From positions 1-64,000 of IMG/VR virus record IMGVR_UViG_3300044632_001003: DNA of 64,000 nt, one strand, 5' to 3'. Position numbers and translations under genes: made by a program. Under the pieces are notes generated by a model. It worked only from the letters and a program-made list of their open reading frames with translations, ran no database searches and had not been told where the DNA came from. Within the stretch, counting starts at the first letter, position 1, and every line of letters starts with the position of its first letter. This document shows positions 11,391 through 64,000 of the stretch, in pieces.

Positions 11391-11439
11391 GGGGGTTTAC
11401 CTCTTTTGAAGTTTAAGTTTGACTGGTATTATCTAAAAA

Positions 11440-12546: not shown

Positions 12547-12572
12547 TTGTTTAGATATTTGGATATAATCTA

Positions 12573-12584
12573 TATTTATTTATA
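12573..12584 (-). promoter_or_regulatory. Overlapping tandem late promoters TATAAATAAATA
   Basis: Exact consensus upstream of gene 22. Confidence 0.8.
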
Positions 12585-12586
12585 AA

Positions 12587-13237: not shown

Positions 13238-13238
13238 T

Positions 13239-13502: not shown

Positions 13503-13675
13503 TATGCTTTTTCCTCTTCTGAATCTACTTCTTCCATACTGAATAAAGAGTTAGCTACTTCTGGGCGAAGTGCTTCAATCTTTTCCCCAGCTTTTGCAAA
13601 AAGTGCATCTTTAATTTGTGCTGAAATATCTGAGGGGGAAGCATCAGACACTACCATGTTAATAAGGTCTTCCAT
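13502..13675 (-). CDS. Small acidic protein, 57 aa, at the position of T4 prohead core genes 67/68
   Basis: Hand-translated MEDLINMVVSDASPSDISAQIKDALFAKAGEKIEALRPEVANSLF...; own late promoter; TAATG overlap with the next gene. Confidence 0.75.
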   Translation of the reverse strand: MEDLINMVVSDASPSDISAQIKDALFAKAGEKIEALRPEVANSLFSMEEVDSEEEKA

Positions 13676-13697
13676 TTTTTTAATATAGTAATATGAT

Positions 13698-13705
13698 TAT
13701 TTATA
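13698..13705 (-). promoter_or_regulatory. Late promoter TATAAATA
   Basis: Exact consensus, overlapping the end of gene 20. Confidence 0.8.
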
Positions 13706-13707
13706 TT

Positions 13708-47500: not shown

Positions 47501-50500
47501 TTTTTGAGTTGAAACTAAGTCCAGTTGGAGATTCAAAAATTTCAACAGATGATATTGAATTTGAATTTATTTTTGGAACTAATATTCCACTATTAACCTT
47601 TTCCCCAGTTTCGTCATCAACAATCACAATTTCTGGTGCGGAGCTATAATTTCTACCACCATCAATAACTTCAATGCTATCAATTGTTAATGAATCTTTT
47701 AATTTAATCGTTGGTGGAATATTTGCTTCAGGTCTAAGAGTATTATCAGAAGGATATTCAAAAGATTGTTCTATAATTCTTATATCTCTTACTTTACCTA
47801 TTTCATTAGATTTTACAAATAAATTAGCATCTCTTCCATTATCAGTGATGATACTTGTTATGCCAGGTAAAGTTTTATAAGTTTTTGTACTAAAATTAAC
47901 AGAAATTTTGTCAATAGGTCCAGATGCTGTTTTTGAGGTGGTAGAATACTCTAGAGCAGAAGTATTATTTTGGTTATATAAAGTATTTTCTGGTTGTGAT
48001 GATAGTGAGACAATAAACGTAGTTGTTCCTACACCAACAACAGAATAATTTTGATTATAGTAACTATTAATGAAAGAAATCTCACAATAATTTCTTACAC
48101 TAACATCAGCTGTAGAAATATATCCAGATTTTTCAATATTATAAAATAGAGAATTTGGAAGTAACTCTGAATAATTTAAAGTAAGTTTAGCAGTGCTAGT
48201 CACCCCAACTGTTCCAACACCAATTGTTGATATGATTGAAGTATTTGCTATTGATACAAATTTGTTATTAAAGTCTTTATCTGAGTATAGATTAAAATTG
48301 TAACCACTCAATGAAGAATCGCTTAGATCAAATACTAAATTATTTCCTTTGATTGGTTGTAATTTTGGATTAACTAAGGACAATGCTTGATTAGAACCAC
48401 CAGTAGATGCAATTGAAACTATTACTGGTGGGTTGGATACGGAGTCTTCATAAGTTATTGTTAATTTGATATTGTCTTTATCTACTCTATAAACATAATA
48501 AACTCCCGTCGATAGCCCAGAAGATACTAAATCAGATGCTGAATAATAAACTTTATCACCAGTTTTATATGAATGTGATGTTATGTTTATTGTATCTAAT
48601 GCTGGATTAACACGATATGAATTGAAACCTACTGGATTAACCAATAACTTTTGAATATCTGACGCAAATTTTAATTTAACCGCAGTAGAAGTTCCAATAC
48701 CTACAGATTGGTTAGGAACAACATTTAAAGTAACTGAATCACCTGGAATAAGTCCATGTGCTGTGGATACTGATACAACGGCATCATTTTTTTGAATGGT
48801 GCATGTTATTTGATTATATGTTGGTTCAAATGAATATTCAAAATTATTAGAACCATTTGTTCTAAAGAACAAACCCTTAGTATTTGTCGTTAGACCAACT
48901 TGAGTTACTATACCAATGTAGTCTTTTGATTTGTTAATAGCATAGACATATTCAAATGAAGAGTTTAGCAAATTAAATGGTGATGAAGTTTCTGTATTTG
49001 AAACAGAAATAGGATCTCCACTCTTCTTCCTAATGATAAGTCTTTGATTTGTTTTAAATGGGTGATCTGGTAAATAAATGCTTTGTGTAGGAATATCTAT
49101 TTGATAATTTAATTCTCCTAGAGAATAAGTAACTGCTACTCCAACTCCAGATGTTGTACCAACACCAACAGACTGATTTGGATTGAAATATACCTTTGAA
49201 TTTAAATCCGAATCAAAATATTGTAATGGTAATCCAATTTCAATAAAGTTGGGATATACAAATCCCAAAGTGCTAGTTGTGTGAGAAGTCCCACTTACAC
49301 CCCTTTTAACTCTTAATAATTTTCTTTCCGAAAAAATATTTAGTACTGACATTATTTCAGTACCTATTCCTATACTTGAACCTATAGAAAGGGTATTTGG
49401 TATAGTAGAAATATAAATGTCTGTTACTAAACCAGATTGAGTAACTGGATTTGATGGAATATCTTTAAATACGGTAAATCTATCTGTTGATATTGATACC
49501 TGTCTATTTCCAGCTATTTTTGGAACAAATGTTGATAGACCAGATATTGATACAATATCACGATTATTTAATACATGGAATGGTGTAATATAAACTCTTG
49601 CTTTATTTTTATCTTCCCAGGTTAGAACCGCATTAGAATATTCTATAGTTGATGATGCAATAGATGTTATTGTCTTACCCTTTAGAGAAGAAACTACAGC
49701 TGATGCACCTTCAGCATTTGAATTCGAATTATCAAATACTAATGCATCATTTAATTTATAGTCAATGCCGTTTTTTGTAACCTCAACTGTTTTTATTTGA
49801 CCCTTTTCAATAGATGTAATTATCGACTCTTGATTAAATTGTGAGTCATCTTCAATAATAAAATCATTTTGAGAGTATTCATCTGAAATTTTATATGGAT
49901 AAGTATTTCTAACTAGATCTGATTTTGAAAAATCAAAGTCTTGATCTAAATTATTTTCAGCATATAGAGACCTAAATCTATTGCCAATAAAATATGGGAA
50001 TTTTGGTTGATATAATCCATCCGTTGTTATTCCAGCAAAATATGCATATGTTCCATTTGGAAAGTCTGGAGTTTTGCAAAATCTTCCATTGTGTATATCT
50101 AAGTCTCCAGAATTATCAAATTTATAGTCTTCAACAAAGAATCCTGGCACAAATCCAGATGGTCTATCAACGATAACTGAAGTATCTTCAACATATCCTG
50201 GTTTTAATATGACTATACCTTGTGCTGAATTAATTGGATTTCTATATCCATATGGTCCATATATTGGATTTCCATCATATGCCCACCCAATAATTGGTGA
50301 ATGAGAAGACCCGTTATCATTGAATTCATTTGTTGCAAGTTCATTTAAGTAGGAAATATTGCAATATTCTAACCCAGTGTTTAATTTTGGATGTAGATAT
50401 TCAGATCCATATCTCTTTGCATCATTTAAAGTTAAATCTCTAACCTTTGTTTCTAGTTTTACATTTCTTCCAGCAGAAACTACCTTGATAGATGTTGTTG

Positions 50501-53500
50501 ATTGTGTATATCCTATTCCAGAATTAATTACAACAACATTAACAATTTGACCATTATTAATTATTGGGCGTAAGACTGCTCCACTACCTTCACCAACTAC
50601 CGTTAATGATGGGGTTGAATAATACTCAGTTCCCTTATTTCTTATATCTACTCTGACAATTTTTCCTGCAAGAACAACTGGATAAAGAGTAGCATCTTTA
50701 CCATTTTTAATTGATATGTTGGGTTTTCTTTCAAAGTTTAAAACTGTACTACCATATCCACTACCAGATTCATATAGGTACAAATCAACAATACTACCAC
50801 GAACAATGGGTGTGCATGTAATTACACCAACATTCGTCGATCCATATGCAACATTAACTGTGACACTGACATCTGGATATTTAAAAATATGATATCCACT
50901 TCCAGTATTTGAAAATTTAGTAAAAATATTTCTAGTATAATTTGTTGATATTGTTGCACCTATTCCAGCATCTGCCAATCTAAAGGAATCATTATCTTTC
51001 TTTATAATATAGTATCTGTTTGATGTTGATAGACCAGAAATTGGGGTGCCAGTATATTGATATTCAACAATATCACCCTCTTTAAAATTATGATCAGTAA
51101 AACTAATTGTATGCTCTATTGTAGAAATTCCTACTGGTTTAACATATAGTTTTCTATTTTGATATCCAGACCCAGAATCTAAGACTTTAATTGACTTTAA
51201 AGTCTTTTTACCGAGATAAGTTCTAAACTTATGGATTCCTGTATTTGACGCTGTTGTGAATCCAACTGTATTAATTCCAGTTATGTAATCATTAAAAGAT
51301 GGATACAATCTAACAGTTTTATTATTTAAAACCCTTACAAAATAAGTTGCATTTTCCAGCAGGAATCTATTTTGATCAGCATTTGAACCAAGATATGTTC
51401 CGATACTAACTGGAGAATTTCCGTTAGATTTATATACTACAGCTTCACCATTTGAAAATTCGTGATTCGATAGAAATGTTATTGTTTCTGCAGTTTCGCC
51501 AACGCCACCAAAATTACTCAGAAGTCTCGCATCAAAATCAACTTCTCTAAAAGTTTTTTCTACAATAGGTTCTAATAAACATCCACTACCATTACCACCT
51601 TGAATACTTAATGAAATAACTTTTTCAAGTTCAATATTTTGCGGATCTACTAGTACTTCTTTAACAGAACCACTTATAACTGGTTGAACAAGTGAAGTTG
51701 TACCAGATCCAGTTGGTGGTCCAGATACAATTATTTGTGGTGGATTAACTACATCATAATCAATTCCAGAGTTTAAAATGCTTATAGATTTTAATGGTCC
51801 ATAATAAATCTTATCTTGAGATTTATAATTTTTTATTTCGACACCATTGACCAACATTCCAATAAACTCTTTATCATTCTCTACTCCATCATTATCTTTG
51901 ATGACTTCTCTAAGTGGAAATTTCCTTAATAATTTTTGTGGTTCAATATTTTTATTAAATTTAGATTCCACTACAAAACTATGCTTTCCACCAACTCCAG
52001 GAGAAAGAGGATTGAATGTAATATAATCATCTATTTGAATAAATGAATTTGATGCATATAATTTTATTTGTTTTGGATCAGTTAATACTTTTACAAAATA
52101 TTTCCCTGTAGCAAGTCCAGATATTGGTGTTGTTTCTGGACTATAGATTACAGCATCTCCTGTCAAAAATGGTATAGAAGTTGGGAATGAAATAATAGAA
52201 TAATCATCATCTGATAGTTCTTTTTGAATTGCACCGCTTTGAGTAGTTGCTGCGCCAATAAAAGTCGAAGCTGTACCAACTCTTATTGATGGTTTGGATG
52301 GTGTTGCATCAAGTCTGAAAGTGTATGATGGCAAAGAATTCGATGCCACATACATAAATTCATTTGCATCATCGGAATACACATTCTGAACATCTGCAAA
52401 TAAAGTATCATTACCATACTTCAACGGTACTAATTCACTAGATGTTTTCTTAATGATTCTTCTTAATAGATGTGGTATCGAAGTCGAAGTGGTATATCCA
52501 ACATAACTTAAGGTAACTTCTTTTGTTCCCCCATCAATACCTGTTACTTTTGCATTGGAAATTCTAACAGAACCAGTAACAGCATTAATAATATCAACTC
52601 TATCATTAACCTTTAAACTAGAAGAATCTATATCAGATTTTAAAGTAAAAACTTTAGATGATAGATTAAAAGAATCAACTTCAAAAGTACAGCTAGTATT
52701 ATATACCCAAGAATTTGCAAAAATTTGCTTATAAGTTCTGTCGTTGGGGTTGCTTGGATTTTTTATTAAGTCACCTAGGTGTTTGATATAAATTTTTTCA
52801 TTTTCAAGATTTAAAGCTTTATCTTCAATCATCTGTAAATTTGAAATTATGGAACATACTTTTAATTCTACTTTCTTATCTAAATTTCCATTTTCAAATC
52901 CAAAAATTGTCTGATTTGATCTTATCGAATCTTTGTTCGAAATATTTTCAGATATACCTGAACAATTTAAAAGTTGATTTACAGTTTTATCTGTATATAC
53001 AATAGTATTATTTCCAGATATTGCTGTCCCAGATTTCTCAAATCCAATTGTCGAATCTACAGTAATAATTGAAGATCCTATTGAAACATCACCAATTACT
53101 TTAGTATTTGCTGTTACTGTAAGGTCACCTTCAATTAAGTCTTGATCGCTATACCCAATGAATAAACCTAGTTTATAATATACTTTATTTTTTCTGGTTA
53201 AAATTTCTACTTCAGATACAGCTGCACTTGTTTTAGTATCTAAAGAACTATAAATTGTTTGCCCAACTAAATTATTTGGATTTCCAGAAATTGCTTCGGT
53301 TAAAATAATAACTCTTCTAATGTACTCTGAATCAGATGGTTTAAAAAGAAATTGCTCTAGGTCAATTACTTTTGGAGTAACTCCATACAAAACTTTATAG
53401 AGGATTTTAAAAGATTCTTCAGTACCTTTTGACTGATAGAATGATCTTGCTTCTTTTAGAAAATTGCCAACATTTAAATCGGAAACAAAATCAACATTTT

Positions 53501-54038
53501 CCAAACCTGGAGCAATAGAATATTTGATTTTATTATAAAATTCTTTTAAAAATAGAGAGCTTAGATTTTGTACAGAAGAATATTGCGTATGTGAAGATGC
53601 GGTTGTTTCTGAAAAAACTAATTCTTCTGGATTATTTGAATCTCTATAACTAGTAATTCCACTAAATCCTCTAACACATCCAGTGAAAGAGTTTGTTGTA
53701 ATTCCAGTATATGTAATAATTTCATCATCAATCTTTAGCAAACCATAATATTGGGGAAATCCCTTTGTACTCAAAACATTGATTGTTGAGCTAGTAGAGG
53801 TGATTGAAGAAGTTATTGAAGTGAATCCAACAATAACTTCTGGAGTTAAGTTGTCAAGATTAATGTAAGAATTAAAATTCTCAGAAATATCCGATGGACC
53901 ACTTGGATATTCTTGAGAAATATAATATTGTTTTAAAAATTCAGATGCCTTTGGGCTTTCATCTAATATGAATGCAGGTAACTGATTTTCAATAATTTGA
54001 TATGCCTTTACCTTTGATTCGATACCAGTTTGAATCAT
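41529..54038 (-). CDS. 7: Baseplate wedge initiator gp7, 4169 aa
   Basis: FYQSKGTEESFKILYKVLY, HSPIIGWAYDGNPIYGPYG, DNDYYQNLSYSVKS, LLHTTG; lies between genes 6 and 8. Confidence 0.9.
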   Translation of the reverse strand: MIQTGIESKVKAYQIIENQLPAFILDESPKASEFLKQYYISQEYPSGPSDISENFNSYINLDNLTPEVIVGFTSITSSITSTSSTINVLSTKGFPQYYGLLKIDDEIITYTGITTNSFTGCVRGFSGITSYRDSNNPEELVFSETTASSHTQYSSVQNLSSLFLKEFYNKIKYSIAPGLENVDFVSDLNVGNFLKEARSFYQSKGTEESFKILYKVLYGVTPKVIDLEQFLFKPSDSEYIRRVIILTEAISGNPNNLVGQTIYSSLDTKTSAAVSEVEILTRKNKVYYKLGLFIGYSDQDLIEGDLTVTANTKVIGDVSIGSSIITVDSTIGFEKSGTAISGNNTIVYTDKTVNQLLNCSGISENISNKDSIRSNQTIFGFENGNLDKKVELKVCSIISNLQMIEDKALNLENEKIYIKHLGDLIKNPSNPNDRTYKQIFANSWVYNTSCTFEVDSFNLSSKVFTLKSDIDSSSLKVNDRVDIINAVTGSVRISNAKVTGIDGGTKEVTLSYVGYTTSTSIPHLLRRIIKKTSSELVPLKYGNDTLFADVQNVYSDDANEFMYVASNSLPSYTFRLDATPSKPSIRVGTASTFIGAATTQSGAIQKELSDDDYSIISFPTSIPFLTGDAVIYSPETTPISGLATGKYFVKVLTDPKQIKLYASNSFIQIDDYITFNPLSPGVGGKHSFVVESKFNKNIEPQKLLRKFPLREVIKDNDGVENDKEFIGMLVNGVEIKNYKSQDKIYYGPLKSISILNSGIDYDVVNPPQIIVSGPPTGSGTTSLVQPVISGSVKEVLVDPQNIELEKVISLSIQGGNGSGCLLEPIVEKTFREVDFDARLLSNFGGVGETAETITFLSNHEFSNGEAVVYKSNGNSPVSIGTYLGSNADQNRFLLENATYFVRVLNNKTVRLYPSFNDYITGINTVGFTTASNTGIHKFRTYLGKKTLKSIKVLDSGSGYQNRKLYVKPVGISTIEHTISFTDHNFKEGDIVEYQYTGTPISGLSTSNRYYIIKKDNDSFRLADAGIGATISTNYTRNIFTKFSNTGSGYHIFKYPDVSVTVNVAYGSTNVGVITCTPIVRGSIVDLYLYESGSGYGSTVLNFERKPNISIKNGKDATLYPVVLAGKIVRVDIRNKGTEYYSTPSLTVVGEGSGAVLRPIINNGQIVNVVVINSGIGYTQSTTSIKVVSAGRNVKLETKVRDLTLNDAKRYGSEYLHPKLNTGLEYCNISYLNELATNEFNDNGSSHSPIIGWAYDGNPIYGPYGYRNPINSAQGIVILKPGYVEDTSVIVDRPSGFVPGFFVEDYKFDNSGDLDIHNGRFCKTPDFPNGTYAYFAGITTDGLYQPKFPYFIGNRFRSLYAENNLDQDFDFSKSDLVRNTYPYKISDEYSQNDFIIEDDSQFNQESIITSIEKGQIKTVEVTKNGIDYKLNDALVFDNSNSNAEGASAVVSSLKGKTITSIASSTIEYSNAVLTWEDKNKARVYITPFHVLNNRDIVSISGLSTFVPKIAGNRQVSISTDRFTVFKDIPSNPVTQSGLVTDIYISTIPNTLSIGSSIGIGTEIMSVLNIFSERKLLRVKRGVSGTSHTTSTLGFVYPNFIEIGLPLQYFDSDLNSKVYFNPNQSVGVGTTSGVGVAVTYSLGELNYQIDIPTQSIYLPDHPFKTNQRLIIRKKSGDPISVSNTETSSPFNLLNSSFEYVYAINKSKDYIGIVTQVGLTTNTKGLFFRTNGSNNFEYSFEPTYNQITCTIQKNDAVVSVSTAHGLIPGDSVTLNVVPNQSVGIGTSTAVKLKFASDIQKLLVNPVGFNSYRVNPALDTINITSHSYKTGDKVYYSASDLVSSGLSTGVYYVYRVDKDNIKLTITYEDSVSNPPVIVSIASTGGSNQALSLVNPKLQPIKGNNLVFDLSDSSLSGYNFNLYSDKDFNNKFVSIANTSIISTIGVGTVGVTSTAKLTLNYSELLPNSLFYNIEKSGYISTADVSVRNYCEISFINSYYNQNYSVVGVGTTTFIVSLSSQPENTLYNQNNTSALEYSTTSKTASGPIDKISVNFSTKTYKTLPGITSIITDNGRDANLFVKSNEIGKVRDIRIIEQSFEYPSDNTLRPEANIPPTIKLKDSLTIDSIEVIDGGRNYSSAPEIVIVDDETGEKVNSGILVPKINSNSISSVEIFESPTGLSFNSKTLFTTNNSNGVGISTIQSSASGIVTCFLTTPLVGFTTNVFNAGDLIFVEGITKNGVGGSGFNSEDYGYTFFTVSSYENLIPAIVRFNLSGYTANPGIADTIQGSYATITKYSNYPKFKVNQKRTEFLVGENLYLNNLPSDLYISAVLKDYIKISGRDSFKESDIVRGTESGSVGTISEIIHSRGKFNVGYGVTASLGWKTNSGQLNNDIQVLPDNDYYQNLSYSVKSTIQYKDSIDTINRLLHTTGLKNFVDTEIISNKKVSIGSTSVDGLIIYDVSEDKRVDTIYGFALSKDTSTQNGTSKFLKTFNKKFVDGLICKTNRVLSIDDVSDQFTNKENVSDTFIDLDEYTDSFARFLVQIRNTSGTQIALYELLLMYDNNQESVFTLRKGYLSNTGLGITFSPGFETDALTTIWKEEEFADVTGNIDTFDVLSLRFTPNDPYDTDYDIKFIKEVLNPNVVGVASTSIGLVKNLSTNTLVSAGSTATIFEYPANQYDAVHSMFHISNLNDNTMNFVEVYLSHDGTNTYLADYYFDSNSSEGISFNDFGEFDASLVGGTLTLKYTNPTTSQVRVLTNAVGFGSTSAGIGTIRFINDFQPEGTERSAKYQSNYVVGTGVTTILTCTSSEITSIKSLVSVSYGSTYALHQILTINADGTDVFSTQYPFLSVGSTTGIGTFGADISSGNVRVRFFPDASVTGIVTIKSYNEIIYTDLDLENSYPEITYGFNRTQSIGIGLFDSFNSKRINKTEFELEYNNTPIFTKEFNPQDSSILNPATGKFTIPNHFFSTGEALIYKPGSTIAGVSSAPVGIGLTADSVGVVTNRLPYRVWAIKDNNTEFRIATRPEYATAGISVTFTTLGSGNAHIFEMVKKNEKTIIAVDDVIQSPLAWTPIVYTVDGNGGFIGTGETVFSISGISSIVTGDIIRVEDEYMKVAGVGLGTTSTGPISTGMIKLVNVERGFVGTVATSHMDASTARVYKGSYNIVGNKVFFTDPPKGSGLVTLDDSGLPRPFSKFNGRVFLRQNYENNLIYDDISQDFTGIGQTFRLTIAGVNTSGIETGSGLVLINGLFQTPTTVNNAGNNFLYGESAGISSITFTGITSTDGTKVTSISDVNQNQFPRGGLIVSLGSTNGLGFAPLVGASVTAVVGAGGSIVSVGLGSTDILGSGYNGLTAIGVSVYQPGHTGVAASIRANVGAGGSLSFTVIVGGNGYTANPDILVSEPTYENLQITGVSRLGIGSTTTTGLNALISLEVGPNSNPITSGRNADAARLILANKTLIGEVAVGRMLAAFPAFTVPGGNQNCIDDIVDVLECITYNLQYGGNDSVYDAGKIYIDNAYLAGEEAESIYAFQQARDMAIQAMRNESITIGGYSSETQVFDYTIEGDISELPGVYNPGDCADVASAITTFVGIVTYAVGLGTIPGSRTIAPGSLFEVSKFIINRPGYAFEIGDVFKPVGLVTAKGLVSPVADFQLTVLDVYYDKFASWQFGQLDFIDSIKPLQNGTRSVFPLRYNSELVSFEKDEKNNDSALIDLDAVLLVFLNGVLQEPKSAYIFDGGSSIQFISAPKVEDNISIFFYNGTRGVDSEQTDILETIKIGDSVFVNRANGISTSLSQISQRTVYDIPTSDTLETDLYQNIGIDEFNYRSIDWSKQKRDLIINGDIVYKDRDSLEGQIYPTARVIKTIQSGDNEIFVDNARFFNYEEDESSINIPSFDALIIEDKSPVAAAISATVSVAGTISGLTITNAGFGYTTATVSVKFSAPKRSSVGVGTTAGPQNSTSIASATATIVNGSVSSVTLVKPGFGYTSTNPPQILVEQPKVISELVKDISIVQGFSGIITGITTTAGIGTALALKFFVNAYTDLQVGYHIFVSGTNVGSGVTSIYSNNNDVIGVGTQYVDNIYRVSALPALNEIVCNIRSNTVTTGIQTLGTSIYNPNGYYSWGRLSSLSRASNPISIGVSGRTINSGLSTFPTIQRRGYGLRDNGAIRKILPD

Positions 54039-58881: not shown

Positions 58882-59053
58882 TTTTTGCGTCTTCTGTAAT
58901 GATTAACTCATTCCCTTCGATAGTTAATCTTACAGAAGTATCTTCATACCACTCCAATTCATTAACTACAGATTCTGGTAAAGTGATATAATATTCTCCC
59001 GTAATTGGATCGACCTGTACAGACTGAAAATTTTCCGCGAAATTTTTTTTCAT
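58874..59053 (-). CDS. AbrB/MazE/SpoVT-like DNA-binding protein, 59 aa
   Basis: Hand-translated; swapped-hairpin pattern YYITLPESVVNELEWYEDTSVRLTIEGNELII. Confidence 0.7.
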   Translation of the reverse strand: MKKNFAENFQSVQVDPITGEYYITLPESVVNELEWYEDTSVRLTIEGNELIITEDAKNG

Positions 59054-59240
59054 CTCATGTAAATTGATTCCTAATTTTCATTTATATAGGAATCGATAGA
59101 TCTCTCGCGTTTTCAAAGTTTTGTAGGTTAGGGGGACCCATTGATTTTATATAGGGGGGGGGTAACGCTTAACGCGCCCGCGAGGGCGCACCCCCCGCGC
59201 AGGGGGACTGCTGCCCCACGCACGAACGCACAGGGGGGCG

Positions 59241-59432
59241 TCACCGCCACTGCACCCCCCGCCCCTCATCAGCGTGTGCCTCAGCGTACTGGGCGGCGAT
59301 GGTGGTGGCGGGCAGTCCCCAGTGAATGTAGGAGGAGGGGCGGGAACCGTTCTTCAACTGGTCAGCGCGGGAGATCCATTTGATTTGGCGGGTCTCCAGG
59401 TCAGAGCACATGGCGAGCGGGAAGATGGTCAT
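59241..59432 (-). CDS. Cassette gene A, hypothetical 63 aa
   Basis: Start MTIFPL set by the cassette leader; -10 TACACT at 59461-59456. Confidence 0.7.
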   Translation of the reverse strand: MTIFPLAMCSDLETRQIKWISRADQLKNGSRPSSYIHWGLPATTIAAQYAEAHADEGRGVQWR

Positions 59433-59493
59433 GGGGTGTCGGTTGAACTGCTGATAGTGTAGCACGTACCGTGGCACACGAACGGGGTAGGGG

Positions 59494-59682
59494 TCAATAC
59501 CCCAACCACACCAGGAACTCACCCGTATCGACAGGACCGAAGCGGGCGGTCACCCCATAGTCGGTGCGGAAGTCATCCCACAGACCGTGCTCCTTTGCTG
59601 CCTGGCAGGCGGTGCTCCAGGGGATGGTCCCGTTGCTGGGGTCGGTGCAGTTCCAGAGGATGTCGGAGAATGTGGCGTTCAT
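59494..59682 (-). CDS. Cassette gene B, hypothetical 62 aa
   Basis: ORF track; TACAAT plus leader. Confidence 0.75.
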   Translation of the reverse strand: MNATFSDILWNCTDPSNGTIPWSTACQAAKEHGLWDDFRTDYGVTARFGPVDTGEFLVWLGY

Positions 59683-59721
59683 CGGGTCGGTTGGTTGAAC
59701 TGAGAGAATTGTAGCACGGGG

Positions 59722-60069
59722 TCAGACGGCACACCAGGCACAGTAGCGGTCGGCGTAGACCTGCTCCAGGCGGTACGCTTCGGATTCGCGGGCGTCGTCG
59801 TCGTGGTTGCCCTCCAGGGATTGGCGGCAGTGAATCAACTCATGGATCAGGGTGGTGACATACTCCAGATGGGGCAGGTCGCGCTCAACATCAATCAGGA
59901 ACTCATGAGCATCCTCCTGCTGCTGCCACCCCACCACACCCTCAGCGTTCAGGCGGCGATGATGGACGGTGACGGTAGCAGCGCCCAGGAGCGGTTCCTG
60001 ATCCAGCATGAAGCGATAGACCTGCTGGGCGAGGCGGGGGCGTTGCTTCTGTCCTGAGGTGAGCAGCAT
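59722..60069 (-). CDS. Cassette gene C, minimal zincin metallopeptidase
   Basis: TLIHELIHCRQ (HExxH) with downstream ESEAY third-ligand motif. Confidence 0.75.
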   Translation of the reverse strand: MLLTSGQKQRPRLAQQVYRFMLDQEPLLGAATVTVHHRRLNAEGVVGWQQQEDAHEFLIDVERDLPHLEYVTTLIHELIHCRQSLEGNHDDDARESEAYRLEQVYADRYCAWCAV

Positions 60070-60113
60070 GGGTCCGTTGCGGTTGAGAGTATTCTACAGG
60101 GTCGCCGCGGCCA

Positions 60114-60320
60114 TCAGGCGGGCAGGCAGTGCCAGTTGATCCATTGACCCTTGCTGCCCTTGCTGTTCCACAGGAGCGACAGAATCTCACGGCGCGATGC
60201 CACGTAGCGGTAGCAGGTCGTGGGGCTGTTGAACCAGCGGACGCGAACGCTGCCCGTGATGGGGTTGGCGCTCAGGCTCCAGACGCTGGTGGAATCGTTG
60301 CAGTTGATGGGGTAGCGCAT
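60114..60320 (-). CDS. Cassette gene D, KTSC-like domain protein
   Basis: DSTSVWSL...VRVRW...YRY...LL....SKGQWIN pattern; start MRYPIN set by the leader. Confidence 0.55.
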   Translation of the reverse strand: MRYPINCNDSTSVWSLSANPITGSVRVRWFNSPTTCYRYVASRREILSLLWNSKGSKGQWINWHCLPA

Positions 60321-60360
60321 CGGGTCGGTTGCTTTGAGAGTATTGTAGCAGGTCGGGGGC

Positions 60361-60528
60361 TCACTGCCCGTTGGTGTAGTCTCCGATGATGATGCCCGTC
60401 TCATTGTGGCGGACCTGGGCGTAACCGAATTCCTCAGACAGGGAGAGGCAGAGGTCCCAGGCGCGGTCCTCATCGGTGGTGGTGTTCTCCCAGGGAGCGG
60501 AGGGGCAGATCACGTCGTAGCGGGTCAT
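60361..60528 (-). CDS. Cassette gene E, hypothetical 55 aa
   Basis: Hand-translated MTRYDVICPSAPWENTTTDEDRAWDLCLSLSEEFGYAQVR...; TATACT plus leader. Confidence 0.75.
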   Translation of the reverse strand: MTRYDVICPSAPWENTTTDEDRAWDLCLSLSEEFGYAQVRHNETGIIIGDYTNGQ

Positions 60529-60596
60529 GGGTCGTTTGCTTGTGTCCCCATAGTATAAGACCCCCAGCGGCGAACCGTGGGGGGCAGTGGTCAGAT

Positions 60597-60740
60597 TCAG
60601 AATTGGATGGGTTCGGCAGTCGGTTCGGCGTCACCCTCCTGGGCGATGCGTTGGCCGTCTGCCAGTCCGTCCAGGATGCTCAGAATCTGGGAACCGTTGC
60701 GACCCTGGCGGAGCAGGGAGAGGGCAAGGTCAAGGGTCAT
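60597..60740 (-). CDS. Cassette gene F, hypothetical 47 aa
   Basis: Hand-translated MTLDLALSLLRQGRNGSQILSILDGLA...; TACAAT plus long leader. Confidence 0.7.
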   Translation of the reverse strand: MTLDLALSLLRQGRNGSQILSILDGLADGQRIAQEGDAEPTAEPIQF

Positions 60741-60803
60741 GGGTCGTTTGAATCAGTGTGGTTTGGTGTGGGTGTCTTTCAGGGCGCACCCGCTCCCATT
60801 GTA

Positions 60804-60980
60804 TCAGGCAGCGATCAGCAGGTCATCCTCCCAGCGGGCAGTGGTCAGAATCTCATCGTAGATCCGATCGGCAACCTGATCAACGTAGCGGCGCTCATCC
60901 GCTTTCAGGATGGCAGCGCGGCACTGGGCGGCAATCTCATCAATGCTCAGGGCGCGGTCGGTGGCGGGGTTGTAGCGCAT
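60804..60980 (-). CDS. Cassette gene G, hypothetical 58 aa
   Basis: Hand-translated MRYNPATDRALSIDEIAAQCRAAIL...; the stop is immediately followed by the next TACAAT. Confidence 0.75.
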   Translation of the reverse strand: MRYNPATDRALSIDEIAAQCRAAILKADERRYVDQVADRIYDEILTTARWEDDLLIAA

Positions 60981-61049
60981 GGGGTTCGTTTGAACTGAGA
61001 ATATTGTAGAGCAGTTTAGGGTCGGTGCTCAGGACATTGTGCCAGTGCC

Positions 61050-61232
61050 TCAGGCGGCACAGAGGGCGGATTCCAGGCAGACCTCCCGCACTTCCAGGCG
61101 GGAGTAATCATAGAGACCCCGCTGCAGCTCCAGTTCATAATCCTCAGCGGTGGAGCGGCAATCGAACAGGCGCAGGGAATCGAAGTCGGTGCCTTCATAA
61201 TCCCAACCACCGATCACAGCATAGACTTTCAT
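61050..61232 (-). CDS. Cassette gene H, hypothetical 60 aa
   Basis: Start MKVYAVIGGWDYEG set by the leader. Confidence 0.75.
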   Translation of the reverse strand: MKVYAVIGGWDYEGTDFDSLRLFDCRSTAEDYELELQRGLYDYSRLEVREVCLESALCAA

Positions 61233-61305
61233 GGGCGGGTCGTTTGAACTGAGAGTATTGTAGGGGATGGAGGTGGGGGGTTGGTGCCCCCCGTGTGCCA
61301 GTGCC

Positions 61306-61482
61306 TCAATCGGCATAGAGGGAGATGAAGTCCTCCACAAACTCCCGCGCCTCATCGCCTGACATGCGGGAGATCATCTCACGGGCGACGGTCTCCCAGG
61401 AGAAGTCGTCTGCCAGGTCAAAGATGGCGACCCGTGCCTCAGAGGCGGAGAGTTCGGAGGCGGTGATCTGGGCGTAGGTCAT
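61306..61482 (-). CDS. Cassette gene I, acidic helical 58 aa
   Basis: Start MTYAQIT set by the leader. Confidence 0.75.
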   Translation of the reverse strand: MTYAQITASELSASEARVAIFDLADDFSWETVAREMISRMSGDEAREFVEDFISLYAD

Positions 61483-61522
61483 GGGGTTGTCTGAACTGAG
61501 AGTATTGTAGGGGGTCAGGGGG

Positions 61523-61711
61523 TCAGAATCCTGCCTGCTGTTCCAGTTCCTCAAGTGTCACACGGTTCCAGGCACTGAACAGGGTAACGTGATCCAGGAC
61601 GCGGCCCATCGTCTCAGGACCAGTCTGGGGGTCGTCCAGGACCTGATCCATGCCAATGCTCATCAGGCGGTGGATCACGGCGTAGGTCTCCTGGCTGATG
61701 GTGATCTCCAT
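61523..61711 (-). CDS. Cassette gene J, hypothetical 62 aa
   Basis: Start MEITISQ; TATAAT plus leader. Confidence 0.7.
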   Translation of the reverse strand: MEITISQETYAVIHRLMSIGMDQVLDDPQTGPETMGRVLDHVTLFSAWNRVTLEELEQQAGF

Positions 61712-61753
61712 AGGGTCCGTTGCGGTTGATCCTATTATAGGGGGTGGCACCCC

Positions 61754-61993
61754 TCAGAATGCCACCAGTTGGTCCAGATCCCATTGTGGCACAGTCTGGA
61801 CGGTGCCCCCGCAGTTCTTCCGCAACCATGCGTTGATGTGCTTGCTGGTGGTGGCGCTCCACTGCTGGGCGGTGCGGATCCAACCCTTGCCAGGCACCAG
61901 GGCGGCAACGGGAGTCACGTAGGAGAACAGGATGCAGGTCCCGTCTGCCAGTTGAACCTCAGTCTGGTTGCTGCCGATCTGTTGAACGATCAT
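61754..61993 (-). CDS. Cassette gene K, conserved phage hypothetical 79 aa
   Basis: GSNQTE...LFSYVTPVAA...WSATTSKHINAWL; leader present. Confidence 0.8.
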   Translation of the reverse strand: MIVQQIGSNQTEVQLADGTCILFSYVTPVAALVPGKGWIRTAQQWSATTSKHINAWLRKNCGGTVQTVPQWDLDQLVAF

Positions 61994-62026
61994 GGGGTTC
62001 CTTCGAACTGAGAGTATTGTAGCAGG

Positions 62027-62242
62027 TCAGCGGCGGGCAGCGGCTAGCAGCAGGTCCAGTAGGACAACTGCCACAACCGCCTTCCAAAAGCCCAGGGCGG
62101 TGATTCCAAACCACCCCAGCACCAGCACCAGGAGCCACGCTTTCAGGGCAACGACGCCAGCGACGCCAACGATCAGGATACCTGCCAGAGCCACCATCTG
62201 CGGGGTGCTGAGGTCCTCAATCCAGGGGTAACGCTTGCTCAT
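62027..62242 (-). CDS. Cassette gene L, small membrane protein
   Basis: Almost entirely hydrophobic, at least 2 TM segments; leader present. Confidence 0.75.
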   Translation of the reverse strand: MSKRYPWIEDLSTPQMVALAGILIVGVAGVVALKAWLLVLVLGWFGITALGFWKAVVAVVLLDLLLAAARR

Positions 62243-62311
62243 GGGTGCCTTGCGGTTGAGAGTATTGTAAGGGGTCAGCGGTGCCCTTTGGGGCAGGGAG
62301 TGGACAGTGCC

Positions 62312-62470
62312 TCAGGTGTCCTCATCCTCCCCCAGAATGAACCCATCAACCCATCCTGCTGTGTATCCGTCATCTTTGGTGAACAGGCGGATCTTAAGAA
62401 GTTTGGCGATTGCAAAGGGCAAACCGATCACCAGGGCTCCAGGGATGAGAATGGCAAGCAGTTCGGTCAT
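62312..62470 (-). CDS. Cassette gene M, single-TM protein with acidic tail, 52 aa
   Basis: Hand-translated MTELLAILIPGALVIGLPFAIAKLL...GEDEDT. Confidence 0.7.
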   Translation of the reverse strand: MTELLAILIPGALVIGLPFAIAKLLKIRLFTKDDGYTAGWVDGFILGEDEDT

Positions 62471-62503
62471 GGGGTTCCTTTGAACTGAGAGTATTGTAGC
62501 GGG

Positions 62504-62671
62504 TCAGCGGGCGATCAGGTCGCCTGCAGTGTACAGTGCCTGAGCTGTCACATGGCGGACGGGGCGAATCGGTTCCCATAGTATCCAGAGCAGCAGAGCG
62601 GCAACGGTCAGGCGAAGCATGGTAGCACGGTGGAACTCAGGGGAACGGGAACGGGTCAGGGAGCGGATCAT
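62504..62671 (-). CDS. Cassette gene N, single-TM protein, 55 aa, coupled to gene O
   Basis: MIRSLTRSRSPEFHRATMLRLTVAALLLWILW...; ATGA overlap with gene O. Confidence 0.65.
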   Translation of the reverse strand: MIRSLTRSRSPEFHRATMLRLTVAALLLWILWEPIRPVRHVTAQALYTAGDLIAR

Positions 62672-62811
62672 GCGATGTGAGCAGGGGAACCACAGGAACG
62701 GTAGAATTCTACCATACGTTCCGCCTCTGCCAGGGTGGGGAACCATTGCGACCGCCACTCACAGTGGTTGTAGGGGACCTGGTAGCGGACTTCGTAGCGG
62801 GTCAGTGCCAT
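62668..62811 (-). CDS. Cassette gene O, hypothetical 47 aa
   Basis: Hand-translated MALTRYEVRYQVPYNHCEWRSQWFPTLAEAERMVEFYRSCGSPAHIA. Confidence 0.75.
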   Translation of the reverse strand: MALTRYEVRYQVPYNHCEWRSQWFPTLAEAERMVEFYRSCGSPAHIA

Positions 62812-62968
62812 GGGTCAGTTGAAAGACTTTGGGGTGGCGGGTCCGTGACCTCCCGCCTACGGGGTCAAGGGGTCTGTGGGGTTGCCCCCGCCGTTCCTCC
62901 CCTTGTTGAACATAGTATGGCACGGCAGAGGGGGCAGGTCTATGGGGTGTGTGCCACATTCTGAACTG

Positions 62969-63553
62969 TCACAGCACCTCTTTGCCGAACTTGCCACACA
63001 GGTAGAATGCCATTCCTTTATCTTTCAGGGTGCAACCTGCAAAGGTGAGAGGAACATAGGCGCCGTTAGTTTTAGATGCTTTGGTGCGAATTTGCAGCAG
63101 TCCGTTAGGACCAGTGATGGTGCTCAGTTGCTCACCAGCATTGAACTTAGCACGAATGGTATCACAAATGTGGTTGTAATCCTCCGCCAGTTCCTGATAG
63201 TGTTCGGGGTGAGTTTCAGGGTTCAGAACCTCAGTGCCCACATAATCGTTGGAGCGGGTGAAACCAACGTAGATGGTTTGAGAGAGTTTCTCACCGACTT
63301 TGCTGTCAGCGAAACTAACACTATCCTCCAGAATCTCAGAGAGGCAATGCTTCAGTTGGGTGACAGCGATAGACTCACCAACCGTGAAGGTCTTCAGTTC
63401 TCCATCCACCAGATCTTTCAGGTTGGAACTGTTAGGAATGCCCAGGGCAGTTTCAATCAGTTGCCCACGGGATCCTTTGTTCTTCCCAGGTTTGGCGAAC
63501 GCAGCGAAGTTAGTTACCTTCAGTTGGGCAGCGACTTGCAGGGTGTTGAGCAT
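62969..63553 (-). CDS. Cassette gene P, MutH/Sau3AI-like PD-(D/E)xK endonuclease
   Basis: NKGSRGQLIETALGI...DLVDGELKT, LQIRTK; start MLNTLQ set by the leader. Confidence 0.7.
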   Translation of the reverse strand: MLNTLQVAAQLKVTNFAAFAKPGKNKGSRGQLIETALGIPNSSNLKDLVDGELKTFTVGESIAVTQLKHCLSEILEDSVSFADSKVGEKLSQTIYVGFTRSNDYVGTEVLNPETHPEHYQELAEDYNHICDTIRAKFNAGEQLSTITGPNGLLQIRTKASKTNGAYVPLTFAGCTLKDKGMAFYLCGKFGKEVL

Positions 63554-63619
63554 CGGGTGCGTTGCTGATGAGATTAGTATAGGGCACCAGGGGCACCCCA
63601 CAAGGGGGTCTGTGCCACT

Positions 63620-64000
63620 TCAACGATTGGCACACTGGAAGCGACCGCTGTTGAAGTTAGCGTTAGAAAAGACCTCACGATTCACCAGTTTGAACATACC
63701 AAACTGATTCACCAGAACGTAACCCTCAGCGTCGATTCTGTTACCGTACAGATAAGCAGCAGGACCATCATTGCGGCAGAGGAACAGGCAGTCATCTTTG
63801 ATAGACTTCACCAATGCCCACAGACGCAGCAGGTTAGCATCACAATCAAAGTCCTCAGGATTCACCTCTTCACCAGCACGAATGCAGGCATTGATCTGTT
63901 GTTTGATCTTTGCCGCTTCCTTCTCACTCACAAAGGTGGCAGTTTGTGCCATCTGACGGGCGAACTTGCACACCTCTTCAACATCAGCGAACGACTCCTG
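63620..64000 (-). CDS. 3' part of a conserved cyanophage hypothetical protein (5' end outside window)
   Basis: The frame stays open to the window edge; C-terminal EGYV...FKLVNREVFSNANF. Confidence 0.7.
   Translation of the reverse strand, partial: QESFADVEEVCKFARQMAQTATFVSEKEAAKIKQQINACIRAGEEVNPEDFDCDANLLRLWALVKSIKDDCLFLCRNDGPAAYLYGNRIDAEGYVLVNQFGMFKLVNREVFSNANFNSGRFQCANR

What the first reader, a model, noticed from the sequence alone, without database searches (positions are those of the whole stretch)
59241..63633. Periodic array of self-contained promoter-microgene cassettes
Fifteen units, each with its own -10 box, conserved leader and gene(s). ATGs are at 59432, 59682, 60069, 60320, 60528, 60740, 60980, 61232, 61482, 61711, 61993, 62242, 62470, 62811 and 63553; eleven of the 14 spacings are 208-282 bp. 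The genes are mutually unrelated while the regulatory DNA repeats, and I saw no terminators between units. Inference: a host-takeover module in which repeats allow shuffling by recombination and stacked promoters boost downstream genes. It is analogous to the PeSL cassettes known from some T4 relatives but has a different architecture (no stem-loop, an upstream palindrome, no -35). I cannot check whether it has been described for cyanophages.
Basis: partly seen in the sequence, partly recalled or inferred. Interest (0 to 1): 0.85.

Follow-up and report, generated by a model that had tools for sequence, protein, structure and literature searches.

The report
Shuffled early-promoter gene cassettes in cyanophage
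A T4-like cyanophage carries a GC-rich run of tiny unrelated genes, each behind its own copy of a repeated promoter and leader, and related phages have reshuffled these units by recombining within the repeats, which is a cyanophage version of the known PeSL cassettes.

Summary
On the minus strand of window 59241-63633 there are 16 small ORFs in 15 units. Thirteen units have a TAnnnT box 28-31 nt before the ATG, followed by a conserved leader, and the proteins are mutually unrelated.

The array runs past the window end to about 67,400, roughly 26 cassettes in all. It lies in the variable region upstream of the late baseplate genes of a T4-like cyanomyovirus.

- The full module is a strict 22-bp palindrome (GTGNCA-N10-TGNCAC), 8 nt, a -35 TTGnnn bracketed by G-run/C-run arms, 17 nt, the -10, the leader and the ATG. 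So a stem-loop equivalent and a -35 do exist.
- The same module occurs in the isolates S-SRM01, S-PM2, S-BM3 and P-HM2. In P-HM2, four of the five genes behind it are experimentally early.
- The cassettes are about 60% GC (GC3 up to 0.88) inside a 30-40% GC genome, and this holds in about 100 related contigs.

Gene order differs widely among relatives. One very recent crossover lies inside a -10 box.

Verdict: a PeSL-type early-promoter cassette array, and a new variant of a known kind. The palindrome's binding partner and the cause of the GC-richness are unexplained.

The parts
62969..63633 (-). Cassette K, the most complete module in the window. Palindrome 63612-63633, -35 TTGTGG 63598-63603, -10 TATACT 63576-63581, ATG 63553, ORF 62969-63553 (194 aa, PHROG 15364, function unknown).
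62504..62972 (-). Cassette 1+2. Palindrome 62951-62972 spans the stop codon of K. The spacing is 8 nt, a hexamer, 17 nt, then -10 CATACT 62914-62919, followed by a leader of about 100 nt. ORF 62668-62811 (47 aa) overlaps ORF 62504-62671 (55 aa).
62312..62498 (-). Cassette 3. -10 TACAAT 62493-62498, canonical leader, ORF 62312-62470 (52 aa, hydrophobic).
62027..62269 (-). Cassette 4. -10 TACAAT 62264-62269, ORF 62027-62242 (71 aa, hydrophobic). The L001/L077 crossover lies in this -10 box.
61754..62021 (-). Cassette 5. -10 TACAAT 62016-62021, ORF 61754-61993 (79 aa, PHROG 5643; DUF8033 in the precomputed Pfam annotation).
61523..61765 (-). Cassette 6. Palindrome GTGGCA-N10-TGCCAC 61744-61765 spans the stop codon of the upstream gene. 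-10 TATAAT 61734-61739, ORF 61523-61711 (62 aa).
61306..61561 (-). Cassette 7. Degenerate palindrome 61540-61561, -10 TACAAT 61504-61509, ORF 61306-61482 (58 aa).
61050..61316 (-). Cassette 8. Degenerate palindrome 61295-61316, G6-loop-C6 hairpin about 61275-61292, -10 TACAAT 61257-61262, ORF 61050-61232 (60 aa, PHROG 17343).
60804..61060 (-). Cassette 9. Degenerate palindrome 61039-61060, -10 TACAAT 61003-61008, ORF 60804-60980 (58 aa).
60597..60803 (-). Cassette 10. TACAAT 60798-60803 lies 63 nt before the ATG. Only the 3' end of the leader is conserved. ORF 60597-60740 (47 aa).
60361..60557 (-). Cassette 11. C6/G5 hairpin upstream, -10 TATACT 60552-60557, ORF 60361-60528 (55 aa, PHROG 17176).
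60114..60347 (-). Cassette 12. -10 TACAAT 60342-60347, ORF 60114-60320 (68 aa, PHROG 7365).
59722..60150 (-). Cassette 13. Degenerate palindrome 60129-60150, -10 TAGAAT 60091-60096, ORF 59722-60069 (115 aa, HExxH motif, PHROG 10499). Orthologues elsewhere keep this promoter and leader but have different upstream neighbours.
59494..59713 (-). Cassette 14. -10 TACAAT 59708-59713, ORF 59494-59682 (62 aa).
59241..59461 (-). Cassette 15, the last one. -10 TACACT 59456-59461, ORF 59241-59432 (63 aa).
59100..59240 (-). 3' boundary of the array. A non-coding spacer of about 74% GC, rich in G and C runs, after which GC falls abruptly to about 35%. It includes a 49-nt element (59104-59152) that is 96% identical to the marine phage S-BM3.
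58874..59095 (-). First conserved gene after the array (X, 59 aa, AbrB/MazE-like). It is preceded by a T4-late-promoter-like TATAAAT, which marks the switch from the early array to the late genes.
63620..64000 (-). 3' part of conserved flank gene J (299 aa in the parent contig, DUF6267). Its stop codon lies inside the palindrome of cassette K. The class-A cassettes continue upstream of it, beyond the window.

Best explanation
**What it is.** This is the early-gene hyperplastic region of a T4-like cyanomyovirus, probably a freshwater one. It is built from autonomous cassettes. In its complete form each cassette reads:
- a 22-bp palindrome GTGNCA-N10-TGNCAC centred near -54.5, often spanning the stop codon of the preceding gene;
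- 8 nt;
- a -35 TTGnnn flanked by a G-run and a C-run;
- a 17-nt spacer;
- a -10 TAnnnT;
- a conserved leader of about 24 nt with no Shine-Dalgarno sequence;
- the ATG and a microgene of 47-115 aa.

In the GC-rich units inside the window the palindrome and the -35 have largely decayed, while the -10 and leader are kept.

**How it works (inferred).** Unmodified host RNA polymerase with its primary sigma factor starts at each -10 directly after infection. An unidentified dimeric factor at the palindrome may help. This would give short-leader mRNAs. Because no U-tract terminators separate the units, transcripts probably read through into downstream units.

**What is shown.** The 45-90 bp of repeated regulatory DNA are the places where relatives have exchanged, lost, moved and duplicated cassettes. 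The unit that moves is promoter + leader + gene. The machinery is inferred to be the phage's own homologous recombination system.

**Not explained.** The cause of the 60% GC composition is not established.
For: **Anatomy**
- Searches give the repeats and coordinates.
- 131 unique palindromes, all exactly 22 nt; 53% have TTG exactly 9-11 nt downstream, and a TAnnnT column follows 17 nt after the -35.
- 9 palindromes in the 20.6-kb locus against about 0.005 in shuffles, and none in window 1-58000.

**The -10 is conserved in its own right**
- of 375 unique upstream regions of array-gene homologues, 266 have TAnnnT at -40 to -24 (shuffles: mean 58, maximum 79), with a peak at -30.
- orthologues of gene 13 vary in the interior of the hexamer (TACAAT, TAGGAT, TATAAT, TATACT, TAGACT) but always keep T1, A2 and T6.

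**Early expression in a relative**
- P-HM2 has the module upstream of PHM2_053, 060, 064, 066 and 068, in the small-gene region before gp25/gp6.
- (Thompson 2016, PMC5082946, S2 Table): 060, 064, 066 and 068 are Early (A) and 053 is Mid (B).

**The palindrome acts at the DNA level**
- one P-HM2 palindrome (39293-39314) sits at the same distance from two divergent promoters.
- the variable arm positions do not co-vary (only 55 of 131 are complementary).

**Shuffling**
- the order and presence of genes 1-15 differ among about 100 loci, while flank genes J and X/Y/Z stay in place. Examples: J 11 2 5 7 9 1 10 14 15 X, and one locus with three copies of gene 14.
- L077 is 100% identical to the window's locus for about 5 kb and diverges inside the -10 hexamer of cassette 4.
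- a relocated gene-4 block in L088 runs from the -10 box of unit 4 into the leader of unit 5.
- 79 of 114 homology-block ends fall outside the coding cores, against 31% expected (p=3e-17).

**Context**
- a T4-like structural module (gp23, gp18, gp17, gp8, gp6, gp25) plus a gp46-like recombination ATPase.
- the same locus is indexed in about 200 blocks of the assembly collection and seen intact in several independent samples.

**PeSL definition:**
Against: - There are no transcript data for this phage. Promoter activity of the GC-rich '-10 only' units is inferred.
- Most window units lack a recognisable -35.
- Hairpin stabilities are only modestly better than shuffles (z from +0.9 to -3.8), and no hairpin is followed by a U-tract. 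The terminator half of the PeSL model is therefore not supported here.
- The strongly conserved leader could reflect an RNA-level function, or simply recent common descent and gene conversion.
- Block ends at gene borders are partly what any gene-wise mosaic would give.
- The P-HM2 genes behind the module are neighbours, so their early timing is not five independent observations.
Confidence: 0.72

Rival explanations
1. One polycistronic early transcript. On this reading the repeated 30 nt are not promoters. They are a reiterated translation-initiation or RNA-processing leader: an AU-richer, unstructured landing pad in GC-rich RNA, used by a host that makes little use of Shine-Dalgarno sequences.
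For: - The leader downstream of the -10 is as conserved as the -10 itself.
- The 31 nt before each ATG are 52% GC, against 67% in the rest of the spacers.
- There is no -35 in most window units.
- There are no terminators between units.
Against: - The T1/A2/T6 pattern survives even when the leader family changes (TACAAT+ACTCTCAGTTCAAA versus TACATT+ACATTCGTNCCTGAGA).
- Sister units have a -35 at exactly 16-17 nt.
- The module drives divergent genes in P-HM2 from a shared palindrome, which a leader alone cannot explain.
- The two readings are not exclusive. The leader may well serve translation in addition.
Confidence: 0.15
2. The GC-rich block is a recently imported foreign island, from the GC-rich host or from a GC-rich co-infecting phage. 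The repeats would then simply be the donor's promoters rather than a device of the T4-like phage.
For: - GC rises from about 35% to about 60% and falls abruptly at 59100.
- GC3 is 0.58-0.88 in the array, against 0.16-0.40 in the neighbouring genes.
- Non-coding spacers are also GC-rich, at 0.67.
- Cyanomyoviruses are described as constitutively low-GC (PMC3152331).
Against: - The same GC-rich array sits at the same genomic position in about 100 distinct viral contigs, whose orthologues are only 75-90% identical. This is old and maintained, not a recent import.
- Every contig with the class-B motif that had measurable flanks is AT-rich outside the island; no uniformly GC-rich donor contig was found.
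- The module grades into the lower-GC class-A units and into modules of marine isolates at 35-40% GC.
- Homologues of genes 5 and 13 occur in AT-rich marine cyanophages and in other phages.
Confidence: 0.2
3. An integron-like system. The palindromes at the gene 3' ends would be site-specific recombination sites (attC-like), and the cassettes would move as circles through a dedicated recombinase.
For: - There is an array of small unrelated genes, each followed by an imperfect palindrome that spans the stop codon.
- Cassette order is permuted among relatives.
Against: - No integrase or recombinase domain is recorded among the called genes of the 20-kb locus.
- The resolved crossover lies in the -10 box, not in the palindrome.
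- The unit that travels is promoter + gene, and its left border lies downstream of the palindrome.
- Only some palindrome spacers fit the attC GTTRRRY core (reading).
- The palindrome keeps a fixed distance to a promoter and serves two promoters in P-HM2.
Confidence: 0.04
4. An assembly artefact: a chimeric join of an AT-rich phage contig with GC-rich DNA of another organism.
For: The change in composition at 59100-59160 is abrupt and lies next to a G10 run.
Against: - The junction with both flanks is identical in independent assemblies from different samples and pipelines, JGI and ENA.
- The upstream side of the island is also flanked by T4-like phage genes.
- Diverged relatives show the same layout.
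Confidence: 0.01

Closest known systems
PeSL (promoter-early stem-loop) cassettes of T4-type phages RB49/phi1, T4/PST and KVP40/nt-1 (Arbiol 2010, PMC2839356; Comeau 2014, PMC4122927)
   Same: - Short composite regulatory repeats lie in the intergenic spaces of a hyperplastic region of a T4-like genome.
- Each sits in front of a small ORFan.
- The promoter is of the sigma-70 type.
- There is an inverted repeat with G-run/C-run arms next to the promoter.
- The repeats coincide with insertions, deletions, replacements and displacements between relatives.
   Different: - The host is a cyanobacterium and the phages are Kyanoviridae, which neither PeSL paper covers.
- An extra, strictly spaced 22-bp palindrome takes the place of the AT-rich upstream region.
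- The G/C arms bracket the -35 instead of lying upstream of it.
- There is no Shine-Dalgarno sequence; a conserved leader of about 24 nt takes its place.
- Most units in this window have lost the -35.
- No U-tract follows the hairpins, and terminator activity is untested.
- The cassette genes are about 25 percentage points richer in GC than the genome.
S-PM2 'ORFanage' region (Puxty 2015, PMC4503421)
   Same: - It is a roughly 10-kb run of small genes of unknown function in a T4-like cyanophage.
- It is dispensable, its synteny is poorly conserved in metagenomes, and its homologues are enriched in freshwater.
- S-PM2 carries the same palindrome-promoter module nearby, at 20.1-20.7 kb.
   Different: - The S-PM2 ORFanage genes are packed stop-to-start without individual promoters, and GC is ordinary at 0.35-0.46.
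- Its authors judged PeSL-mediated shuffling unlikely there.
- Here every unit has its own promoter and shuffling is evident.
Early gene cluster of Prochlorococcus phage P-HM2 (Thompson 2016, PMC5082946)
   Same: - It occupies the same genomic position, a small-gene region just upstream of gp25/gp6.
- It has the same palindrome / -35 / -10 module, in front of early-expressed genes.
   Different: - P-HM2 has only about five modules, at low GC.
- Genes lie on both strands, with one shared palindrome between divergent promoters.
- It has no class-B leader.
Integron gene-cassette arrays
   Same: Arrays of small unrelated genes are each bounded by an imperfect palindrome, and cassette order varies between relatives.
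   Different: - Integron cassettes have no promoter of their own and depend on an integrase and attC sites.
- Here each cassette has a promoter, no integrase is present, and the crossover seen lies in the promoter.
Halovirus HF2 intergenic repeats that carry promoters (PMC8707807; abstract only)
   Same: Repeated intergenic sequences in a tailed virus act as promoters.
   Different: The host is an archaeon with a different promoter type. I read only the abstract, so no role in shuffling was assessed.

Membership tests
PeSL cassettes (Arbiol 2010; Comeau 2014) | Lies in intergenic spaces of a hyperplastic region of a T4-like phage, upstream of small ORF(an)s. | tested here: met
   The flanks are T4-like structural and recombination genes. 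The array holds 16 ORFs of 47-194 aa, mostly without a family. The region varies among relatives between conserved flanks.
PeSL cassettes (Arbiol 2010; Comeau 2014) | Sigma-70-like early promoter with -35 and -10 boxes about 17 nt apart. | tested here: inconclusive
   A -10 TAnnnT is present in all 15 units, in 13 at -28 to -31, and is conserved across 375 upstream regions. A -35 TTGnnn at 16-17 nt is present in unit K, in the class-A units beyond the window and in isolates, but is absent from most GC-rich window units. Early timing is shown only in the relative P-HM2.
PeSL cassettes (Arbiol 2010; Comeau 2014) | Stem-loop, often polyG...polyC, just upstream of the promoter. | tested here: inconclusive
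   An inverted repeat (the 22-bp palindrome) lies upstream of the promoter, and G-run/C-run arms are common. However, the G/C arms bracket the -35, fold z-scores are modest, and the palindrome arms do not co-vary.
PeSL cassettes (Arbiol 2010; Comeau 2014) | [quoted passage not shown] | tested here: not met
   The upstream position is taken by the GC-containing palindrome. No GGAG-type motif precedes the ATGs; the conserved leaders ACTCTCAGTTCAAA or ACATTCGTNCCTGAGA are found instead.
PeSL cassettes (Arbiol 2010; Comeau 2014) | The repeats coincide with insertions, deletions, replacements and displacements between related phages. | tested here: met
PeSL cassettes (Arbiol 2010; Comeau 2014) | Measured promoter and terminator activity, and excised mini-circles. 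| not testable with these tools
   This needs reporter assays and inverse PCR on infected cultures.
Integron cassette array | An adjacent tyrosine-recombinase integrase, attC sites, and cassettes without their own promoter. | tested here: not met
   No integrase domain is recorded among the called genes. Each cassette has its own -10. The crossover lies in the promoter.
Sigma-54 promoters (TGGCAC-N5-TTGC) | GG and GC elements exactly 10 nt apart. | tested here: not met
   The right arm TGGCAC is followed by TTGC after 8 nt, not 5. A sigma-70-type -10 follows 17 nt later. From general knowledge, cyanobacteria lack sigma-54.

The most novel reading that the evidence does not exclude
Two linked possibilities remain open.
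1. The 22-bp palindrome GTGNCA-N10-TGNCAC, fixed at about -54.5, may be the operator of a still unidentified host or phage factor that controls early transcription across Kyanoviridae, in Prochlorococcus, marine Synechococcus and freshwater Synechococcus phages alike.
2. In one freshwater lineage the early cassettes may be held at host-like GC by a regional force. One candidate is GC-biased gene conversion in a recombination hotspot next to the array's G/C-run boundary. Another is selection for translation from the host's tRNA pool before phage functions act. Either would be an exception to the rule that cyanomyoviruses stay uniformly low-GC.
Probability: 0.3. Interest if true: 0.75.

Novelty: new variant of a known kind. 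Interest (0 to 1): 0.6.

Why it matters
- **Reach of the PeSL mechanism.** PeSL-type cassettes are the proposed mechanism by which T4-like phages gain and lose accessory genes. They have been documented in coliphage, Yersinia and Vibrio relatives. The one cyanophage study that considered them judged them unlikely there.
- **What this locus adds.** It shows a dense array in cyanomyoviruses, with a crossover resolved to a -10 box and about 100 natural variants of gene order. It is a ready-made data set for measuring how phage accessory genes are shuffled in nature.
- **A testable regulatory element.** It exposes a conserved early-promoter architecture with a strict palindrome, shared by cultured model cyanophages (P-HM2, S-PM2, S-SRM01). 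This makes the regulation of cyanophage early genes directly testable.
- **An unexplained composition.** The host-like GC of the cassettes inside a low-GC genome is unexplained and bears on how phage genome composition is set.

Tried and rejected
- **RNA families and tRNAs.** Rfam on the 20.6-kb locus found nothing relevant. No tRNA or tmRNA was found.
- **Protein function.** Pfam, PADLOC and PDB sequence searches for K and gene 13 gave no function for the microgenes. My first impression that K resembles a MutH/Sau3AI-type nuclease found no support. PHROGs gave only 'unknown function' families, except an anti-restriction hit for gene f, which lies outside the window.
- **Similar isolates.** Megablast of the island against 50,697 phage records matched only a 49-nt piece. 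Blastn with one regulatory repeat found no isolate carrying the class-B leader.
- **Phage-type single-subunit RNA polymerase promoter.** I considered this for the 20-30-nt conserved block and dropped it, because the only invariant part across leader families is a TAnnnT with a -35 at 17 nt.
- **Other readings.** Sigma-54, integron attC and an assembly chimera were each considered and rejected (see the membership test and the rival explanations).
- **RNA hairpin as terminator.** There are no U-tracts, the z-scores are modest, the stop codon usually sits in the loop, the arms do not co-vary, and the palindrome is used bidirectionally in P-HM2.
- **Literature.** The library yielded no description of this palindrome or of dense PeSLs in cyanophages. 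The Syn9 transcriptome paper (Doron 2016), which maps cyanophage promoters, is not held, so prior description there cannot be excluded.
- **Not done.** I did not test protein homology between the S-PM2 ORFanage genes and these cassettes.

Full report
**1. What the window is**

The window equals the first 64 kb of a 205-kb metagenome contig (JGI 3300044632, Ga0453722_0000007). Its large ORFs, all on the minus strand, are T4-type late and replication genes:
- major capsid protein gp23, scaffold, tail sheath, large terminase, gp8 and a gp46-like ATPase;
- gp6, gp25 and an S-adenosylmethionine decarboxylase.

The nearest isolates are cyanomyoviruses: S-SRM01 from a freshwater reservoir, S-CAM7 and P-SSM2, at 71-81% nucleotide identity over short stretches.

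The finding lies directly upstream of these late genes and runs in the same direction. Locus L001 is the reverse complement of contig 52969-73553 (L001 x = window 73554 - x). It let me read 9.5 kb beyond the window end.

**2.

- All 15 ATGs are start codons on the minus strand. Eleven of the 14 spacings are 208-282 bp.
- The repeat is far beyond chance. The 20-mer TACAATACTCTCAGTTCAAA occurs 6 times with up to 3 mismatches against 0 expected. The 13-mer core occurs 9 times in the array and once elsewhere in 64 kb.
- Thirteen units carry TAnnnT 28-31 nt before the ATG. Two carry it 63 and 108 nt away. One extra ORF (62504-62671) overlaps its neighbour and has no box of its own.
- The 16 proteins are unrelated to each other. 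Their codon-position GC (GC3 0.58-0.88, above GC2 in every ORF) marks them as real genes.
- No U-tract terminator lies on the gene strand.

**3.

The array continues upstream to L001 about 6,100-6,300, which is window-equivalent about 67,400. There the units are better preserved. The complete module reads:
- a palindrome GTGNCA-N10-TGNCAC, always exactly 22 nt;
- 8 nt;
- a -35 TTGnnn;
- 17 nt;
- a -10 TAnnnT;
- a leader of about 24 nt;
- the ATG.

Among 131 distinct palindromes collected from related loci, 53% have TTG exactly 9-11 nt downstream, and the T-A---T columns follow 17 nt later. A G-run before the -35 and a C-run after it often form a hairpin with the -35 in its loop. The palindrome usually spans the stop codon of the preceding gene, in different reading frames.

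Within the window:
- Unit K (ATG 63553) has the whole module, and unit 1 keeps its spacing.
- Three palindromes are strict and about six are degenerate.
- Most units have no -35.

Two leader families exist. Class A (TACATT ACATTCGTNCCTGAGA) sits in the 42-50% GC part. Class B (TACAAT ACTCTCAGTTCAAA) sits in the 60% GC part.

The palindrome is confined to this region. There are 9 copies in L001 against about 0.005 in shuffles, and none in window 1-58000.

**4. It is a promoter module, and an early one**

Three lines of evidence show that the -10 is conserved for its own sake.
- In 375 distinct upstream regions of homologues of the array genes, 266 have TAnnnT at -40 to -24 (shuffles: mean 58, maximum 79), peaking at -30.
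- Orthologues of gene 13 change the interior of the hexamer but never T1, A2 or T6.
- The hexamer is the one element shared by both leader families.

The same module occurs in cultured phages:
- five copies in S-SRM01, in the equivalent region;
- S-PM2 at 2186, 20117, 20398 and 20655, and S-BM3 at 6053;
- P-HM2 upstream of PHM2_053, 060, 064, 066 and 068, in the small-gene region before gp25/gp6.

In the published P-HM2 time course, 060, 064, 066 and 068 are Early (A) and 053 is Mid (B). The early cluster is essentially PHM2_056-074 (PMC5082946, S2 Table). The genes just before gp25 are late in P-HM2. This matches the TATAAAT late-promoter-like box in front of gene X here.

One P-HM2 palindrome (39293-39314) sits equidistant from two divergent promoters. 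The variable arm positions do not co-vary. I therefore read the palindrome as a symmetric DNA site, centred near -54.5 where PeSLs have an AT-rich stretch, and not as an RNA stem. What binds it is unknown.

At least 81 of the 129 distinct modules had a TAnnnT at 16-18 nt.

**5. Shuffling**

The class-B motif is present in 103 IMG/VR stretches. Mapping the window's genes onto them shows conserved flanks (J upstream; X, Y and Z downstream). Between the flanks there are many different orders and subsets of genes 1-15, with relocations of genes 1, 4, 11 and 12 and a triplicated gene 14.

- Locus L077 is 100% identical to the window's locus for about 5 kb. It then drops to 79-86% identity and lacks gene 4. 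The switch occurs inside the -10 hexamer of cassette 4.
- A relocated gene-4 block in L088 runs from the -10 box of unit 4 into the leader of unit 5.
- Of 114 internal homology-block ends in the array, 79 fall outside the coding cores, against 31% expected (p=3e-17). Part of this is what any gene-wise mosaic would give.
- Orthologues of gene 13 keep their own promoter and leader while the upstream neighbour changes. The join lies at the neighbour's TGA stop, about 6 nt before the -10. The mobile unit is therefore promoter + leader + gene.

The exact arrangement in the window is nevertheless stable within its population. It recurs in independent assemblies.

**6. The composition anomaly**

- GC is 29-44% over nearly all of window 1-59000 (one 1-kb bin, at gp23, reaches 0.50), 59-61% from 59,000 to 63,000, and 50% to the window end.
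- In the parent contig GC rises gradually from about 42% through the class-A units to 60-66%, then falls within about 100 bp to 35%.
- The same profile recurs in nearly all of the ~100 motif-bearing loci (island 0.53-0.63 in most, flanks 0.29-0.50) and in loci found through gene 13.
- Spacers are even richer in GC than the genes (0.67, and 0.74 at the boundary), so this is not codon selection alone.
- Homologues of genes 5 and 13 exist in AT-rich marine cyanophages and in unrelated phages. No uniformly GC-rich carrier of the motif was found.

Cyanomyoviruses are described as keeping constitutively low GC and compensating with tRNAs (PMC3152331). No tRNA gene lies in this window. I cannot explain the island. 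Possible explanations are a maintained regional bias such as GC-biased gene conversion in a recombination hotspot, selection for early translation from the host tRNA pool, or continuing import from GC-rich phages.

**7. Comparison with known systems**

PeSLs are defined as a stem-loop, often G-run/C-run, just upstream of a sigma-70-like early promoter with an AT-rich upstream region, a Shine-Dalgarno sequence and an ATG. They are concentrated in hyperplastic regions and associated with indels and gene exchange. Promoter activity, terminator activity and mini-circles have been shown experimentally.

- **Met here:** location, promoter type, an adjacent inverted repeat with G/C arms, and association with rearrangements.
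- **Not met:** the AT-rich upstream region and the Shine-Dalgarno sequence.
- **Decayed or unsupported:** the -35 is lost in most window units, and terminator function is unsupported.

Neither PeSL paper mentions cyanophages. The S-PM2 ORFanage paper looked for PeSLs and judged the mechanism unlikely in that phage. S-PM2's ORFanage genes are indeed packed without individual promoters.

I file this array as a new variant of the PeSL kind. It works like a PeSL array, and it is not a sequence relative of the described ones.

**8. Limits**

- There are no expression data for this phage.
- The function of every cassette gene is unknown. Gene 13 has an HExxH motif, and gene f, outside the window, resembles anti-restriction proteins.
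- 'Host takeover' is therefore a reasonable guess, not a result.
- The freshwater origin is inferred from the nearest isolate only.
- One key paper on cyanophage promoters could not be read.

Noticed in passing
window 59104-59152 (minus strand, upstream of gene X): A 49-nt non-coding stretch is 96% identical to the marine Synechococcus phage S-BM3 (3426-3474). There too it lies upstream of a small hypothetical gene. This is far better conserved than the surrounding genes, so it is probably a regulatory element next to the late-promoter-like TATAAAT.
   Followed up: partly
window 59150-59240: This is a non-coding boundary of about 74% GC with G and C runs, including a run of nine or ten C on the gene strand. 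Its predicted fold is -57 kcal/mol, but z is only -1.0. It marks the abrupt end of the GC-rich island. Its function is unknown.
   Followed up: partly
L001 5990-6260 and 7740-7830 (window-equivalent about 67,300-67,560 and 65,720-65,810): A second repeat family, ATCTCGACGAG, occurs both in spacers and inside gene a, where it encodes Asp/Leu/Glu-rich repeats. The same repeat appears in S-SRM01.
   Followed up: no
L001 5800-5840, 7855-7890 and 7998-8030 (beyond the window end): Three copies of an AT-rich hairpin (TTCTCAATAA ... TTATTGAGAA) lie at the start of the array and in a gene-free gap of about 700 nt between genes f and g. They may be terminators or another regulatory element.
   Followed up: no
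window 62504-62560 (3' end of ORF 62504-62671): A decayed palindrome lies inside the coding sequence. The position that is the TGA stop in sister units reads TCA here, so the ORF appears to have been extended through the old regulatory element to the next TGA.
   Followed up: no
L269 (P-HM2) 39293-39314: A single palindrome is shared by two divergent early promoters, PHM2_064 and PHM2_066, each at the standard distance.
   Followed up: yes
L001 7265-7738 (window-equivalent about 65,816-66,289): Cassette gene f (157 aa) matches PHROG 36653, annotated as an anti-restriction protein (E=3e-13). It is the only cassette gene with a functional hint.
   Followed up: no
window 41529-54038 and 32832-39920 (minus strand): Two giant ORFs of 4169 aa and 2362 aa lie next to gp6 and gp8. 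The 4169-aa ORF carries a YHYH domain in the precomputed annotation. They are presumably baseplate or fibre proteins of gp7 type.
   Followed up: no
L114 (S-SRM01) 10,000-15,000, record 86-91 kb: The equivalent region of the cultured phage S-SRM01 is also raised in GC (0.41-0.52 against 0.29-0.38 in the flanks), though far less than here. The GC enrichment of this region may therefore be graded across the group.
   Followed up: partly
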